The notes beneath the pieces are model-generated. The model had not been told where the DNA came from. It worked only from the letters and a program-made list of their open reading frames with translations, and made no database searches. A DNA stretch of 64,000 nt, taken from NCBI RefSeq assembly GCF_000142905.1, contig NW_013657671.1, forward strand, positions 124,001 through 188,000. Direction: 5' to 3'. Numbering within the stretch: position 1 is the first letter of the stretch; each line of letters opens with the position of its first letter. Positions 1 to 4,898 of this stretch are shown in pieces. The translations under genes and the position numbers were made by a program. This stretch comes from Thecamonas trahens ATCC 50062 (taxonomy: Eukaryota > Protista > Apusomonadida).

Positions 1-2916
1 TTCGCCGCAGTGCCCGCAGGAACGCGTTGCTCAACAGCTCGTCGTCGTCCGAGTCTGAGCCGTTGTCGGACACATGATTGACGTCCTTGCCATCTTCGAG
101 ATCGTCGTCGAGCAGCCGCATGAGCGACGAGACGTCGACGTCGTCAGATGACGACGACACGACACCCGCGTCGACGTCGTCGGCCTCGGCATCGTCGTCA
201 AAGTCCTGCTCAAAGTCTTGTTCGTCCTCGACAGCCTGCTTGAAGATGTTGATGCCGTCGTACCACTGGACAATAGCACGGGTCTTGGACTTGATCCGCG
301 CCTGGACAGCCGCCGACGAAGAGAGTCGCATGATGTCGACGAGCGAGGCACGGAGCCGGAGCCAGGCCTGCTTGACCCGCGACCGGCCCGAGGTTCGGTC
401 GACCTGGTCGGTGAGAAAGGCCTCGCGGAACTCCTTTTCCAGCACCAGGATGGTGAGCTTGCGGAGTGCCGACGGATTGATCCAGTTGAGGAACTGGACA
501 AAGTCCTCGCGGTCGAGGTCGCGCGAGCCATTCGGCCCGTTCTTGGTGTACCCCGCCCGCCGCTCCGCAGGCGTGAGCTTGGGCAGAAAATGGTTGTAGT
601 GCGGGTGAAGGCGCCACTTGAACCGCTTGATGCGGATCTTGCCGCGAGCCGCGAGCACAACTGCGCCGTCGTTGAGCGAGGTGTCGGTGTAGTTGGGCGC
701 CGAGAAGACCGTTGTCACTGCCGGAAAGTCAAAGTCGGGCCCAGCCGCCGAGGCCTCGAACCCGTGTTTCTTCTGCTGGTGGGCGCGGACAATGCCGGTC
801 ACCGAGTTGATGCGCAGAAAGGCGTCGACAGCCGGCTTGCCAAAGTCGTGCACGTTCTTGCCGCGCGACGACGAGTGGAAGTACGACTGCCGATACCCGC
901 CTGGCGCCTTGCGCCGCGCCGACGAAAGCGCGGTGAGGTCCCACGACTCGGCCTGGTCGTCGTCCGACGCCGCAAGGTCGCGGTACGGGTCGGCCCAGAG
1001 CGTGTCCTTGAGCGGCCCGCTTTTAGGCGGCTCGCGGAACCGCGAGATGCCTTCGATGTGCCGGAGCTTGACCACCTGCGGGGAGATGCCGCCATGGACT
1101 GCCAGCAGCGAGTGTCCGCCAGTCCTCACCAGCGCTGCCAGCGGCAGCGCGTCAAACGTCTTCATCAGCTCGTGGTAGAGCTTCTTCTGGTACTTGCTCG
1201 TGATTTCCGCCATCGATCCGTACTTGCGTGTCGTCTTGCGCGACTCGTGGTTACCGCGGAGGAGCCAGACCCGCGATGGGTACCGGACCTTGGCCGCCAG
1301 CAGCAGAAGCGCCACCTCGGCCGAAAAGTACCCGCGGTCAACATAGTCGCCGAGGTATAGGTGCTGCCGCTTTGAAGTGCCAGGAAAGCCCGAGATCTTG
1401 AACATCTCCTGCAGGTCAAAGTACTGCCCGTGGATGTCGCCCATGATGGCCACCGGCTCTTTGAGCACCAGCAAGTTTGGCTCCGACTTGAGAATCGCCC
1501 GTGCCTGCCGCACAATCGTCAGCGCGTCGGCCTTGCGGAGCTTGCCCTCCCGCAGAAAGTGGGTGTAGATGTTGCGGAGCCGCGGCCGCCCGTCGGCGTC
1601 AAATGCTTTGCCGTGCATCAGCCGGTTGTGGTCGTGGAGGAAGAGGACAAAAACCGGGCGGCTGCCGTCGATTCCGATGCTACTGAGACGCTTCGACGAG
1701 CGCGGAACGTGGAAGCCGTCGTAGTAGAAGCGGAGGAGCGAGCCTGATGGGTGCTTGGCCATCTCGGCCACCGCCGTGCTGAACGCCTTCATCGTTGCGT
1801 TCGCCTTGACCGTCACCTCGTAGTACTCGTCGAGATAAAACGCGTCGACCGTGACGCGGATGCACCCGTCAGGCACCGACGACCGGCTGCTGTACGAGTA
1901 GCTGCTGCCCGCGGATCTGCTGCTCGACCCGCCCGACGAGTCCGTGCAAGTCTCGGACTCGGACTCGCTCGAGTCCGAGTCCGAGTCCGAGTCCGAATCC
2001 GACTCGCTGCTCGAGTGGCCGTCCACCCGCTGCTTGAGCAAGAGAAACAGGTTGTGCGTCGAGGCGCCGCTGTCAGAGGCCTCCTCGTCCGAGAGTTCGT
2101 ACATGGGTCCGGTGTAGCCCATGATGGTGCAAAACTCGGGAAAAGTGATGCCGCCGTCGTGATTGACATCTGCCACCGCAAGCATCGCCGCCTTGTCCTC
2201 CACCTCGAGCCCAATCTTGTTGAGCACCGCCTCGAGCTCCTCCACAGACACGCTGCCGTCGCCGTCGGCGTCAAACACCGCGTATGCATCGCGGAGCTCG
2301 CGGAGCTGCATCCGCTGCGCCGCATGGTGCATCGCCACAAAGTCGTCAAATGAAATGGCATCGTCCTTGCTCTTGCCCACCGTCTCCAGCAACGCCTGTG
2401 CGTCTGCCGCAGATGACGCTCCGCCCATTGCCGTCAGCAGCGCACGGACCTCGGCGCCCTCCAGGATTCCGTTTCCATTGCGATCTGCGGCATCGAACAC
2501 TGCCCGCATTCCCCGCAGCTCGCCCTCGCTCAGCTCGGGCTCCTCTCGGCTGCTTGCCTCGCTCCTAGAGCCCGATCCGGACCCAAACGACAGGCCCGAG
2601 TCCTCGTAGCCGGACTCGTAATCGGTGCCGGACTCGTAGTCCGAGTCTGACCCCGAGTCTGACCCCGAGTCCGACCTCGAGTCGGACCCCGAGTCTGATC
2701 CCGAGCTTGACTGCGACCGCTCGCCTTGCTCGCCTTGCTCGCCTTGCTCGCCTTGCCCGCCTTGCCCGCCTTGCTCGCCTTGCTCGCCTTGCCCTCGCCC
2801 TTGTCCCTGCTCGACCGCCGTCCGTGGCTCCGTGCCGTGTCCTTGGCCTCATCTGCAGACAGCTTTTCCCACCCATGTCTCCGAGAGACGGGTGTGTGTC
2901 CTTGAGCGTTGCCCAT
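1..2916 (-). CDS. Calmodulin-like EF-hand + ubiquitin/SUMO-like + calcineurin A (PP2B)-type Ser/Thr phosphatase fusion protein; 3' end runs off the window; apparent 1-nt frameshift near 2719
   Basis: I translated the minus-strand frame that stays open from about 2848 to position 2; it is absent from the ORF track because it has no stop in the window. It contains EF loops DRNGNGILEGAE, DADGDGSVSVEE and DVNHDGGITFPE, then PPP motifs GDIHG (~1430-1445), GDYVDRG, LRGNHE, HGG, RAHQ and FSAPNY. Calcineurin-specific segments are present: FDADGRPR..HFLREGKL and RFREPPKSGPLKDTLWADP. The likely N-terminus MGNAQG.. (ATG 2916) is in another frame; the first in-frame ATG is at 2509. Confidence 0.88.
2717..2802 (-). 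repeat. 9-bp coding tandem repeat (AAGGCGAGC)n encoding KAS/KAG
   Basis: About 8 direct copies of ctcgccttg/cccgccttg on the + strand. Confidence 0.85.
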
Positions 2917-3305
2917 ACTGCCCTATATCCGTATTCTCAGCCAGTCGAAGCTACCGACAAGTGTACTGCCTCGGATTGTCGGGCTGGGATAGCTCGTCGG
3001 GCTGGAGATAGCTCGCCGTCCGTCGCGATCGCGATGGAGATCACCACCGCCCTTTTCTCCACCTCGCCGGTTCCCGGAATACAGGACAGGTGGCTACGCC
3101 CCGAACACGGCCAGATGACCACCCCTGGCGTTCCAGCTACCAGTCATCCACGCTCTACGCCGCCGCCCATGCCCCCTTACTCGGAATCTCCCTCTCCCCT
3201 CCCTTTGCTGGCCAGTCCTCGCCCTCGTCGCCGGCGGAGCGTCGGGTTTACGGCCTTTTCCGGAATTCGGCAAGTGATCACACCACCAGCCACCACCCCT
3301 CCGCG

Positions 3306-4898
3306 ATGATGACTTCCACAGCGGACATCCGGGGCGTGGCCGAGACAGACTACGCCGCAGCCTTGGGCGTTGAGTGGCACAACGTCATCGCAGAGCTTGC
3401 GCCCGCACAGGCGGCACCCACCTACCCAGCCGACGACGCCGCCACGGTCATCAGCGCCATTGACACGGGCGCCGTCGACGCGGTCACCCACGCCATCGTC
3501 GACCTGCCGCGCCTCGGATGGGCGGCCGAGACGGCGCCATCCAGCACCCTCGGCATGTTTGCACGGGTCTTTTTCGCCGCCCTGCTTGCCGGCGAGTCCA
3601 ACGTCCCGCCGCTTGCTGGGCTTGCTGGCGGGGGCGAGCGGGCGGGATTGGCAGCACCGGGTACCGCCACCGTGACGGCGGCGCGACGGTTTGTGCTTTT
3701 GGCGGCTGAGGCCATTGCGCTCAAAGCAGAGGCGGCCGACGGCCACAAAGGCAAAAACCACGGATGGGTGGTGCTGAGCAAAGGCTTGCGGTCCGGATTT
3801 GTCGGCTCGGTCCAGCAGCTGCGCATCGCCGCGCTCTCGCACGCCACACTGCGCGCCTCACCGCCCGCCAGCGCCCGCGAAGAGTTGCTGCTCGCGCTGG
3901 CAGCGCTCGAGACGGAGCAGGAGGCGGACACCTGCACCGATGCATGGGTAACTGCTGGGAGGATGCTGCTTGCACTCGCGCCGCACCCGGGTCCTGAGCT
4001 CGATGGCGTGGCTGAGATGGCGGCGAGCCGCGGCCTGTGGCGCGGCCTGCGGCTGGCCATCAGCGTCGGGCGGGCAGGCCGACTGCACGTTGTCCATCCA
4101 ATTCGTGGCTCGGTCCTCCATGCCTTGGCCGCGGGCGGTGGCAGCCGCCGCCGCCCGCGGCCAAGGCCTGCCGCCGCCGAGCTCGAGCTTGCCGCCGCCA
4201 CCGTTGCGGTGCTCGAGGGGGTTGTGGCGCAGCGCGCTGGTCTCACCCCCAACGGCTGCAGCGTCATCGGCCATATGCTCTCGATGCAGCGTGGGTACGA
4301 CCGCGCGCGCCCAAGCATGCTCGCACGCGCAACGCGGTGCGCCACCGTCCGGGCACTGCTCGAGACCTGGGCGCACAAGACCGCGGCGGTGCCAGAAAGT
4401 GCGGCGCCCGAGCTCGGCGCCACCGCCGACGACGACCCGCTTACCCGCCAGCTGCAGGAGGCCTGGCTCCGGGTCCAGTCTGTCAACCGGAGTCTTGCCG
4501 GCCCGCTAGACCGCTTGCTGCTGCCGCGCAGCAAGCCCGAGCCGCCGCAGCTCTTTCCACGCCTCGGTGAGGTCGAGCCCGGCATGGTGGCCACCGAGCA
4601 GTGGCTTGCCATTCCGCTGGCCCAGCTCAAGACGGTTGTCGGCCGCAGCGGCCGGGTCATTCGCCCGCTGCAGCGGAGCCACGGCGTGGTGGTCCTCACC
4701 CCCGAACGCGACGCCGTCGTCTCGCCGCCGTCGCCAGCCGCCGCACCGACCCGCATCGTCGTTCTCGCCATCCTCGGCAGCGCACGCCGGGTCCGCAACG
4801 CCGCCGCAGAACTTGTCGGCCTTGCGCGCCGCGGTCAACGCCACGACCAGCACTTCCGCTCGCTGCGAGCAAGGACCGGCCAGCCGCGCACGCTCTAA
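3306..4898 (+). CDS. Hypothetical protein with a C-terminal type I KH domain
   Basis: ORF 3090-4898 with first ATG at 3306. C-terminal LAIPLAQLKTVVGRSGRVIRPLQRSHGVVV...LAILGSARRVRNAAAEL fits a KH fold with a GxxG loop (GRSG). Confidence 0.6.
   Translation: MMTSTADIRGVAETDYAAALGVEWHNVIAELAPAQAAPTYPADDAATVISAIDTGAVDAVTHAIVDLPRLGWAAETAPSSTLGMFARVFFAALLAGESNVPPLAGLAGGGERAGLAAPGTATVTAARRFVLLAAEAIALKAEAADGHKGKNHGWVVLSKGLRSGFVGSVQQLRIAALSHATLRASPPASAREELLLALAALETEQEADTCTDAWVTAGRMLLALAPHPGPELDGVAEMAASRGLWRGLRLAISVGRAGRLHVVHPIRGSVLHALAAGGGSRRRPRPRPAAAELELAAATVAVLEGVVAQRAGLTPNGCSVIGHMLSMQRGYDRARPSMLARATRCATVRALLETWAHKTAAVPESAAPELGATADDDPLTRQLQEAWLRVQSVNRSLAGPLDRLLLPRSKPEPPQLFPRLGEVEPGMVATEQWLAIPLAQLKTVVGRSGRVIRPLQRSHGVVVLTPERDAVVSPPSPAAAPTRIVVLAILGSARRVRNAAAELVGLARRGQRHDQHFRSLRARTGQPRTL

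What the first reader, a model, noticed from the sequence alone, without database searches (positions are those of the whole stretch)
1..2916. Self-contained Ca2+-activated phosphatase: calcineurin A fused to its own calmodulin-like domain
Seen in sequence: one minus-strand frame, missed by the ORF track, encodes a calmodulin-like module (~2105-2520; three canonical EF loops and one degenerate). An acidic Ser/Asp linker and a Ubl-like domain follow, then a complete calcineurin-A-type catalytic domain. Downstream, ARIKSKTRAIVQW (~260-305) resembles the calcineurin CaM-binding helix (EVIRNKIRAIGKM), while the calcineurin-B-binding helix looks divergent (FVQFLNWINPSALRK). Established: canonical calcineurin needs separate CnB and calmodulin, and PPEF/RdgC phosphatases carry EF-hands at the C-terminus, not the N-terminus. 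Inference: this may be a single-chain, CDPK-like phosphatase that supplies its Ca2+ sensor in cis, possibly membrane-anchored by N-myristoylation.
Basis: partly seen in the sequence, partly recalled or inferred. Interest (0 to 1): 0.82.

Follow-up and report, generated by a model that had tools for sequence, protein, structure and literature searches.

The report
Calcineurin-like phosphatase with built-in calmodulin
The protist Thecamonas trahens has a real gene that joins a calmodulin-like calcium sensor, a ubiquitin-like domain and a calcineurin-related phosphatase in one chain. It belongs to a small family I found described in no paper, and it probably switches itself on with calcium without separate helper proteins, though nobody has tested this.

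Summary
One uninterrupted minus-strand frame runs from window 2848 to a stop 97 nt beyond the window's left edge. It encodes a four-EF-hand calmodulin-like module (three canonical loops, EF2 degenerate), an acidic linker, a ubiquitin-fold domain, and a PPP catalytic domain with an intact active site whose closest relatives are calcineurin A.

The genome is Thecamonas trahens ATCC 50062, and the protein is already in public databases (P0001, 990 aa). This genome holds six paralogues. About ten 50%-identity clusters among 1.84 billion protein representatives share the family's C-terminal region. One relative carries the EF module at the C-terminus, and some have none.

In a tree the family is a well-supported clade next to canonical PP2B, not inside it.

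It lies four residues upstream of a conserved helix (877-894) carrying the calcineurin autoinhibitory motif F-x2-A-x3-[D/E]-x3-E. AlphaFold puts that helix where the calcineurin autoinhibitory domain sits. The EF module is confidently placed only when residues 851-990 are present.

This fits CDPK-like self-activation, but it rests on models only. The MGNAQG start is in another frame, so myristoylation is uncertain. First readers of this scan also flagged paralogues elsewhere in this genome.

The parts
2761..2916 (-). Putative first coding segment, MGNAQG... (P0001 residues 1-52). It has a Lys/Ala/Ser 9-nt repeat and a possible N-myristoylation signal. It is in a different frame from the rest of the gene.
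   Evidence: Translation; database model P0001. The frame relation was worked out.
2720..2760 (-). The 41-nt stretch that the public gene model removes as a GC-AG intron to pass from frame 1 to frame 3. It could equally mark a single-base assembly error nearby.
   Evidence: P0001 against the window sequence. 364 formally possible GT/GC-AG joins exist. A homopolymer indel was found in paralogue C17.
2540..2719 (-). Ser/Asp/Gly-rich low-complexity linker (residues 53-112), predicted disordered.
   Evidence: pLDDT about 30.
2090..2539 (-). Calmodulin-like module with four EF-hands (residues 113-262). Loops: EF1 2485-2450, EF2 (degenerate) 2377-2342, EF3 2272-2237, EF4 2170-2135. It is followed by the conserved motif LGYxGxxxEL.
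   Evidence: Pfam EF-hand_7 twice. Best PDB matches are calmodulin, E about 1e-19, while CnB scores only 19 bits. The C-lobe matches the Ca2+-bound CaM C-domain at rmsd 1.9 A. The motif is seen in alignment A1.
1871..2089 (-). Acidic Ser/Asp linker (residues 263-335). Two short low-confidence helices at 261-284; residues 270-330 are predicted disordered.
1631..1870 (-). Ubiquitin-like beta-grasp domain (residues 336-415).
   Evidence: pLDDT above 90. VIA Z 11-11.6, rmsd 1.4-1.6 A to ubiquitin and UBL domains. PF00240 hits in relatives P0003 and P0125.
581..1618 (-). PPP catalytic domain of PP2B type (residues 420-765). Motifs GDIHGQ, GDYVDRG, GNHES, HGG, RAHQQ and SAPNYTD are all present. It carries an insert of about 30 residues (631-660) relative to calcineurin A.
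   Evidence: Pfam; PDB phmmer; hhalign E 1.9e-94 to canonical PP2B; VIA Z 51, rmsd 2.2 A to 1AUI; invariant columns; motif table.
329..517 (-). Helical region at the position of the calcineurin CnB-binding helix (residues 787-849). It includes EDFVQFLNW (E790 is invariant in the family) and LVLEKEF.
   Evidence: Alignment A1. Helices H787-799 and H809-820 have pLDDT 76-94. No significant similarity to the CnA CnB-binding helix.
260..313 (-). It is the candidate docking site for the EF module.
   Evidence: Helix H855-872. A basic K/R-rich pattern is conserved in the family. The pTM contrast between the full-length and 105-850 models.
194..247 (-). Autoinhibitory-domain-like helix (residues 877-894) with the motif F878-x2-A881-x3-E885-x3-E889.
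   Evidence: VIA alignments to autoinhibited calcineurins end at model 893-894, paired with the end of the AID (1aui_A residue 486), whereas AID-less chains stop near residue 780. PP1- and PP5-substrate chimeras also align up to 892-897. MAFFT places canonical F..A...D..NE..P under it. E885 and E889 are at least 90% conserved.
1..193 (-). Acidic tail (residues 895-958). The gene continues 97 nt outside the window into a polybasic end (KGKRGKSKSKSK...RKRK) and the stop codon.
   Evidence: Predicted disordered.

Best explanation
This is one real gene of Thecamonas trahens. It encodes a multidomain Ser/Thr phosphatase of a small, undescribed family related to calcineurin A.

Domain order: [possible myristoyl signal] - calmodulin-like 4-EF module - ubiquitin-like domain - PP2B-type catalytic domain - helical region - basic amphipathic helix - autoinhibitory helix - acidic and polybasic tail.

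Most likely mechanism (inferred, not shown):
- At rest, the C-terminal helix 877-894 lies in the catalytic cleft as the calcineurin autoinhibitory domain does.
- When Ca2+ loads EF1, EF3 and EF4, the protein's own calmodulin-like module grips the adjacent basic helix 855-872 and pulls the inhibitory helix out.
- The enzyme would then be activated without free calmodulin and without calcineurin B. This is the logic of CDPK and CaMK kinases applied to a phosphatase.
- Lipid or polybasic elements at the ends probably hold it at membranes.

Shown here: the gene structure, the domains, the intact active site, the family and its phylogenetic position.
Inferred: the autoinhibition, the cis docking and the Ca2+ dependence.
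For: Single gene:
- A 981-codon open frame.
- The relative P0002 is one uninterrupted ORF in three metagenome assemblies, including Tara Oceans.
- Six paralogues in the genome have the same domain order.

Domains.

Active site: D480, H482, D510, R514, N542, H543, H594, R671 and H699 lie in columns conserved in at least 90% of 69 aligned PP2B-type sequences; H594 and H699 are invariant.

Position in the PPP family:
- The family clade has 100/99 support. It sits with canonical PP2B on one side of a 96/95 split, away from the genome's own PP1-, PP2A-, PP5- and PPEF-type genes.

Autoinhibitory helix:
- VIA alignments to 1aui, 4or9, 4orb and 4ora reach model residue 893-894, paired with the end of the AID, in a register that matches F878/A881/E885/E889 to F470/A473/D477/E481.
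- MAFFT gives the same pairing.

Cis sensor:
- The full-length model has pTM 0.70 with only about 710 ordered residues of 990. That is only possible if the EF module is placed with confidence.
- The model of residues 105-850 has pTM 0.71, where a docked EF module would give about 0.85. The pLDDT of the EF C-lobe (215-234) falls from about 80 to 64.

Fusion pattern ('Rosetta stone' type):
- In this family the CaM-like module is N-terminal in most members, C-terminal in P0126, and absent in the P0004 lineage.
- All of them keep the conserved C-terminal helices; the basic character of the first helix is weak in P0126.
Against: - No experiment and no transcript data were available.
- I could not see predicted contacts or PAE. 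EF docking is deduced from pTM arithmetic on one run per construct.
- The AF2 alignment contained canonical calcineurins whose AID MAFFT had placed under the family motif. This may have steered the model.
- Sequence statistics do not support homology of the C-terminal region: hhalign E 0.32, and a 26-column AID profile finds nothing significant.
- In the model the EF module has a continuous central helix (176-201), so it is not the classic wrapped calmodulin-peptide form.
- EF-less family members show that the C-terminal switch can work with a separate partner, so free calmodulin could act here too.
Confidence: 0.55

Rival explanations
1. The N-terminal EF module is a built-in calcineurin-B equivalent: a constitutive, myristoylated structural subunit on the helix after the catalytic domain. 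Free calmodulin would still bind the basic helix 855-872 in trans to release the autoinhibitory helix.
For: - The model protein starts MGN..., like myristoylated CnB (from my own knowledge), followed by four EF-hands.
- EF-less relatives keep the basic helix and the AID-like helix, so a trans sensor must exist for them.
- The genome encodes several calmodulin-like proteins.
Against: - The EF module scores about 70 bits to calmodulin but only 19 bits to CnB.
- In the model it is not where CnB sits. The single-chain CnB-CnA structure 4il1 aligns over 474-475 residues only at rmsd 14 A.
- The construct that keeps helices 787-849 but lacks 851-990 loses confident EF placement.
- The family shows no significant similarity to the CnB-binding helix.
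Confidence: 0.2
2. The EF module does not gate catalysis. It acts as a Ca2+-dependent localisation or membrane switch (Ca2+-myristoyl-type, or Ca2+-dependent partner binding), and the phosphatase is regulated otherwise.
For: - A possible myristoylation signal here, and MGLGLT in paralogue C6.
- Polybasic C-termini in P0001, P0003 and P0123, and a CaaX-like end (CVVQ) in P0002.
- Long disordered linkers separate the EF module from the rest.
Against: - The pTM contrast indicates a defined intramolecular position that depends on the C-terminal regulatory helices.
- P0126 carries its EF module at the C-terminus, after the regulatory helices, while most members carry it at the N-terminus. A module kept in the same chain at either end fits regulation of the enzyme better than N-terminal membrane targeting.
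Confidence: 0.12
3. Artefact: two adjacent genes (a calmodulin-like gene and a calcineurin-like gene) wrongly read as one, or a decaying pseudogene.
For: - The 5' end needs a frame join.
- The assembly contains single-base indels.
Against: - There is no stop codon between EF1 and the C-terminus over 949 codons within the window; the full open frame is 981 codons.
- The same order occurs in five more paralogues and in uninterrupted metagenomic ORFs.
- Catalytic and Ca2+-binding residues are intact.
Confidence: 0.03

Closest known systems
Calcineurin A (PP2B/PPP3 catalytic subunit)
   Same: It is the closest catalytic domain by sequence (38-42% identity, E about 1e-64; hhalign E 1.9e-94), by fold (Z 51, rmsd 2.2 A) and by tree. 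It shares the SAPNY-x-D signature. It has a C-terminal helix with the AID motif F-x2-A-x3-[D/E]-x3-E that is modelled in the active site, preceded by a basic amphipathic helix.
   Different: - It forms a separate clade outside canonical calcineurin A; Thecamonas has its own canonical CnA on contig C36.
- It carries a calmodulin-like module and a ubiquitin-like domain in the same chain.
- There is no recognisable CnB-binding helix sequence.
- The basic helix lies 4 residues, not about 50, from the inhibitory helix.
- It has an insert of about 30 residues in the catalytic domain.
PPEF/RdgC phosphatases (PP7 group)
   Same: A single-chain PPP phosphatase with its own EF-hands, regulated by Ca2+ (structure and mechanism in PMC11962071).
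   Different: PPEF has an N-terminal IQ motif and C-terminal EF-hands, and its catalytic domain belongs with PP5. Thecamonas has its own PPEF-type gene (C44), which falls on the other side of the tree. The fold match to RDGC is weaker (Z 36).
EFPP / PPP8 of Apicomplexa
   Same: N-terminal EF-hand motifs followed by a PPP domain (Kutuzov and Andreeva 2008, as cited in PMC8355824 and PMC4094981).
   Different: EFPP is described as apicomplexan-specific, very large (218 kDa in Toxoplasma, PMC8785970), and with substitutions in catalytic residues. Here the active site is intact and a Ubl domain is present. I had no EFPP sequence, so the relation is untested.
CDPK (calmodulin-like-domain protein kinases)
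   Same: The same logic: an enzyme, an autoinhibitory junction and a calmodulin-like domain in one chain, often N-myristoylated.
   Different: CDPK is a kinase, not a phosphatase, and its sensor is C-terminal. The likeness is an analogy only, with no homology outside the EF-hands.

Membership tests
PPP-family Ser/Thr phosphatase | The motifs GDxHG, GDxVDRG and GNHE, plus the HGG, RAH and SAPNY metal and phosphate ligands. | tested here: met
   All are present. They fall in invariant or at least 90%-conserved columns of 69 sequences. Pfam Metallophos E 4e-28.
Calcineurin A (PP2B) | The catalytic domain falls inside the PP2B clade. | tested here: inconclusive
   The family (100/99) groups with canonical PP2B on one side of a 96/95 split, away from the PP1, PP2A, PP5 and PPEF types. 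It forms its own clade in an unresolved polytomy with the two canonical PP2B groups and three other Thecamonas PP2B-like genes.
Calcineurin A (PP2B) | A CnB-binding helix (NFMDVFTWSLPFVGEK type) directly after the catalytic domain, and an obligate CnB partner. | tested here: not met
   The profile alignment to canonical PP2B stops at HPxY. The C-terminal regions alone give E 0.32, probability 0.2%. In the fold alignments that lack the AID, no match goes beyond residue about 784. CnB binding itself is not testable here.
Calcineurin A (PP2B) | A calmodulin-binding domain. | tested here: inconclusive
   A basic amphipathic helix (855-872) exists and the best, non-significant hhalign path pairs it with the CnA CaM-binding domain. 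There is no statistical support and no binding test.
Calcineurin A (PP2B) | A C-terminal autoinhibitory domain that occupies the active site. | tested here: inconclusive
   The motif F-x2-A-x3-E-x3-E is conserved. AF2 places it where the AID sits in 1AUI, in matching register. But a short profile search is not significant, and the model may be biased by its alignment.
PPEF/RdgC | C-terminal EF-hands, an N-terminal IQ motif, and a catalytic domain allied to PP5. | tested here: not met
   The EF-hands are N-terminal here. The genome's PPEF-type gene (C44, C-terminal EF-hands) and its PP5-type gene lie in the other half of the tree.
EFPP (apicomplexan EF-hand PPP) | A long N-terminal region with EF-hands and a PPP domain with altered catalytic residues; sequence kinship. 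| not tested
   Only the domain order could be compared, from papers.
Calmodulin-like EF-hand module | Two lobes of paired EF-hands with canonical 12-residue loops; calmodulin as the nearest relative. | tested here: met
   Three canonical loops and one degenerate. The top 60 PDB matches are calmodulins or calmodulin-containing fusion chains. The C-lobe is at rmsd 1.9 A to the Ca2+-CaM C-domain.
Ubiquitin-like (beta-grasp) domain | The ubiquitin fold. | tested here: met
   Z 11-11.6 over 73-79 residues at rmsd 1.4-1.6 A. PF00240 scores above its cut-off in P0003 and P0125.

The most novel reading that the evidence does not exclude
These proteins would be the phosphatase counterpart of CDPKs: an old, separate branch of calcineurin-type enzymes in which a calmodulin-like domain in the same chain (N- or C-terminal) pulls a calcineurin-type autoinhibitory helix out of the active site when Ca2+ rises. 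The enzyme would then need neither calcineurin B nor free calmodulin, and should be insensitive to FK506 and cyclosporin. The added ubiquitin-like domain would give a second, still unknown, regulatory or targeting input.
Probability: 0.4. Interest if true: 0.72.

Novelty: new variant of a known kind. Interest (0 to 1): 0.57.

Why it matters
Calcineurin is the textbook Ca2+/calmodulin-dependent phosphatase. It is described as working only as a holoenzyme with separate subunits (PMC10214084). A related family that carries its own calmodulin-like sensor, at either end of the chain or not at all, is a natural experiment. It shows how Ca2+ control of a phosphatase can be wired, and how subunits become domains.

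If the mechanism holds, the protein offers three things:
- a compact, single-chain Ca2+-switched phosphatase for biochemistry and for engineering;
- a test of whether the calcineurin autoinhibitory helix predates the CnB/CaM arrangement;
- a view of Ca2+ signalling in apusomonads, close relatives of animals and fungi.

Tried and rejected
- Complex prediction (EF module against residues 780-900, with Ca) was not available. No direct interface test was made, and that says nothing either way.
- hhalign of the C-terminal regions, family against canonical calcineurin: E 0.32, not significant.
- A 26-column profile of the canonical AID gave no significant hit in family members, and no better than on reversed sequences.
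- I enumerated introns that could join the MGNAQG frame to the main frame. There are 364 formally possible GT/GC-AG joins, so sequence alone cannot decide.
- I looked for calcineurin B among four EF-hand loci of the genome. They are a centrin and calmodulin-like proteins, not CnB. Whether Thecamonas has CnB stays open.
- Giant-virus contigs match only the generic catalytic domain (residues 445-740), with no family-specific parts. The Atlas lead to a Nucleocytoviricota EF-hand-phosphatase cluster (score 0.87) was not confirmed as kin.
- CnB-like reading of the EF module: rejected on sequence and on position in the model.
- PPEF membership: rejected.
- Six literature searches found no description of this family.
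For the 5' end I used only the database's own model P0001, by id. For paralogues split between frames (C17, C6) I used single open frames only, and left out the joined versions.
Full report
**What is in the sequence**

The three minus-strand translations of window 1-2916 show one frame with no stop from position 2848 down to position 1. The window is G000:C9:124001-188000. In the flanking DNA the frame runs on for 32 codons to a stop at L001:1403-1405. A six-frame search of the genome reports a 981-codon open frame here.

Pfam finds Metallophos and two EF-hand pairs in this one frame.

The first in-frame ATG (window 2509) lies inside the entering helix of EF1, so coding sequence must start further upstream. 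The ATG of MGNAQG (2916) is in another frame. The public protein model of this gene (P0001, 990 aa) joins the two frames by removing 41 nt (2760-2720, GC...AG) inside a 9-nt tandem repeat.

I could not decide between a real intron and an assembly indel:
- 364 GT/GC-AG joins are formally possible.
- The assembly does contain homopolymer errors. Paralogue C17 is split where a run of four T stands, while the metagenomic relative P0002 reads Val-Phe-Asp, which needs five.

The N-terminus, and with it the myristoylation idea, is therefore plausible but unproven. P0001 was used only as the database gave it, and split paralogues were used as single open frames.

**Organism and database status**

Earlier notes of the scan name the genome Thecamonas trahens. 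I confirmed this. Paralogue C6 is XP_013761524.1, 'calcineurin subunit A [Thecamonas trahens ATCC 50062]', on a contig of the same length as C6 here. P0001 itself is in NCBI, UniRef and EukProt. The protein is thus already deposited, but only with automatic annotation.

**Domains** (P0001 numbering)

- Residues 113-262 form a four-EF-hand module. The top 60 PDB matches are calmodulins or calmodulin-containing fusion chains (E about 1e-19). The CnB part of the 4il1 fusion chain scores only 19 bits.
- Residues 336-415 have the ubiquitin fold (Z 11-11.6, rmsd 1.4-1.6 A). Relatives give Pfam ubiquitin hits.
- Residues 420-765 are a PPP catalytic domain with every catalytic motif intact.

**Which phosphatase family**

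- Against PDB sequences, calcineurin A scores 224 bits, PP2A 160 and PP1 156.
- By fold, calcineurin gives Z 47-51, PP5 43, PP1 40 and the PPEF protein RDGC 36.
- Profile-profile comparison with 25 canonical PP2B sequences gives E 1.9e-94 over residues 407-766.

I built a maximum-likelihood tree (IQ-TREE, LG+C20, 38 rows) from three sets:
- all PPP-type open frames of this genome;
- five metagenomic or transcriptomic relatives;
- 14 canonical PP2B-type sequences (12 labelled PP2B by source name or top hit, 2 unlabelled metagenomic).

The query's family is a clade with 100/99 support. A 96/95 split puts it together with canonical PP2B and three other Thecamonas PP2B-like genes. On the other side are the genome's PP1-type (C14), PP2A/4/6-type (C46, C12, C40), PP5-type (C5b) and PPEF-type (C44) genes. 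Those labels come and, for PP1 and PP5, from signature motifs I know.

Within the PP2B-like group the branching is unresolved. The family sits beside the canonical calcineurin A clade, not inside it. Thecamonas also has a canonical CnA of its own (C36, 60% identical to Aspergillus nidulans cnaA).

**The family**

The genome holds six paralogues with the same order of parts: C9 (this one), C17, C6, C29, C5 and C3.
- The C3 copy has degenerate catalytic motifs.
- C29 and C5 carry inserts of about 290-320 residues inside the catalytic domain.

An exhaustive HMMER search of 1.84 billion 50%-identity representatives found about ten clusters that share the region after the catalytic domain.

P0002, the closest relative of paralogue C17 in the tree, is one uninterrupted 888-codon ORF in three independent marine metagenome assemblies, one of them from Tara Oceans. 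This independently confirms that the EF-hands and the phosphatase are one gene.

The position of the sensor varies:
- P0126 has the Ubl, the catalytic domain and the C-terminal helices, but carries its four EF-hands at the C-terminus.
- The P0004 lineage has only a short N-terminus, the Ubl and the phosphatase.
- All N-terminal-EF members share the motif LGYxGxxxEL after EF4.

Other PP2B-like proteins with a C-terminal EF pair also exist. The ESM Atlas lists EF-hand-plus-Metallophos clusters in haptophytes, oomycetes and green algae (leads only). EF-hand/PPP fusions as such are therefore not unique. This particular family is rare.

**The C-terminal region**

Statistically neither is supported:
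- The full profile alignment stops at the end of the catalytic domain.
- The C-terminal regions alone give E 0.32.

Something else emerged. I ran AlphaFold2 on the full protein with a 69-sequence alignment (pTM 0.70; catalytic domain and Ubl pLDDT above 90; EF module 64-90; C-terminal helices 64-89). Its best VIA-align matches were the four autoinhibited full-length calcineurin structures. For 1aui_A the match is Z 51.2, rmsd 2.2 A, model 389-894 on chain 14-486.

Calcineurin chains that lack the autoinhibitory domain stop matching near model residue 780. PP1- and PP5-substrate chimeras, whose fused peptide lies in the active site, also align up to residues 892-897.

The end point 894 on 486 implies F878/A881/E885/E889 on F470/A473/D477/E481 of human CnA. 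MAFFT had independently put the canonical 'F..A...D..NE..P' under the family's 'F..A...E..YE..P'. E885 and E889 are conserved in at least 90% of the family.

I therefore read helix 877-894 as an autoinhibitory-domain equivalent.

Two caveats apply:
- A short AID profile finds nothing significant.
- The AF2 input contained canonical calcineurins aligned at these columns, which could bias the placement.

**Does the sensor act in cis?**

- Full-length model: only about 710 of 990 residues are ordered. A pTM of 0.70 cannot be reached unless the 155-residue EF module is placed with confidence. Its mean contribution must be at least 0.5.
- Second model, residues 105-850: this lacks the basic helix, the AID-like helix and the tail. 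It gave pTM 0.71, where a docked EF module would give about 0.85. The value fits an undocked module. The pLDDT of the EF C-lobe segment 215-234 fell from about 80 to 64.

So, in AlphaFold's view, the EF module's position depends on residues 851-990.

It is not in CnB's position: 4il1, a single-chain CnB-CnA, aligns over 474-475 residues only at rmsd 14 A. The EF module keeps a continuous central helix (176-201), so it is not the classic wrapped form. Its C-lobe resembles the open, Ca2+-bound calmodulin C-domain (rmsd 1.9 A).

This is indirect evidence, from one run per construct.

**Conclusion on mechanism**

Taken together, the best explanation is a self-contained, autoinhibited, calcineurin-type phosphatase whose own calmodulin-like domain releases the inhibitory helix when Ca2+ binds (confidence about 0.55).

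The main rival is that the EF module is a fused CnB-like subunit and free calmodulin is still needed (0.2). A pure localisation role for the EF module (0.12) and an artefact (0.03) are less likely.

The polybasic C-terminal tail here and in P0003 and P0123, the CaaX-like end of P0002, and MG-starts here and in C6 all suggest membrane association.

**Comparison with what is known**

- Canonical PP2B is described as working through holoenzyme complexes (PMC10214084).
- PPEF/RdgC has C-terminal EF-hands and an IQ motif (PMC11962071).
- Apicomplexan EFPP/PPP8 has N-terminal EF-hands but altered catalytic residues, and is called apicomplexan-specific (PMC8355824, PMC4094981, PMC8785970).

Six full-text searches found no paper on a calcineurin-type enzyme with a calmodulin-like and a ubiquitin-like domain, or on calcineurin in Thecamonas.

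I rate this a new variant of a known kind. The domains and the regulatory logic are familiar, but the combination and the clade are undescribed. First readers of this scan flagged paralogues of the same family on other pieces of this genome, which agrees with the six copies found here.

Noticed in passing
L031 (G000:C17:254000-261000), junction near L031:4307: Paralogue C17 is split into two frames between EF2 and EF3. A run of four T stands where the metagenomic relative P0002 reads Val-Phe-Asp, which needs five. This is most likely a single-base homopolymer error of the assembly.
   Followed up: partly
L024:1792-6312 (+) (G000:C3:~624300-628800): Paralogue C3 has a 1507-codon open frame with the same EF-Ubl-phosphatase order plus a roughly 500-residue N-terminal extension. 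Its catalytic motifs are degenerate (GDLHGH, GNYGTHS, RGAMES, SAPNL), so it is probably a pseudophosphatase.
   Followed up: partly
L028:2229-5561 (+) and L029:2061-5834 (-): Paralogues C29 and C5 carry low-complexity, Lys/Ser/Asp-rich inserts of about 290-320 residues inside the catalytic domain, at the same place as the 30-residue insert of the query.
   Followed up: no
P0126 (NCBI GCA_041445565.1, 3.7-kb contig): A member of the same family (Ubl, catalytic domain, C-terminal helices) carries a four-EF-hand calmodulin-like module at the C-terminus instead of the N-terminus.
   Followed up: partly
L023:1253-3622 (-) (G000:C20): Another PPP gene of this genome has an N-terminal EF-hand (residues 118-144) before its Metallophos domain. 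In the tree it lies far from the PP2B group, with C3b and C62. It might be an EFPP-like type.
   Followed up: no
L009:427-3393 (+), L011:388-3834 (-); P0166, P0182, P0198, P0212, P0220, P0234: Two long PP2B-like Thecamonas genes (C55, C19) form their own clade. Several long metagenomic PP2B-like proteins carry an EF-hand pair near the C-terminus. Whether these belong together was not checked.
   Followed up: no
C-termini of P0001, P0002, P0003 and P0123; N-terminus of P0268: Family members end in polybasic tails (P0001, P0003, P0123) or in a CaaX-like CVVQ (P0002). Paralogue C6 (P0268) starts MGLGLT. These are repeated hints of lipid or membrane anchoring.
   Followed up: no
window 3090-4898: Just upstream of the gene, long open frames overlap on both strands (602 aa on +, 458 aa on -) in DNA of 66-73% G+C. 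I did not examine which, if either, is a gene.
   Followed up: no
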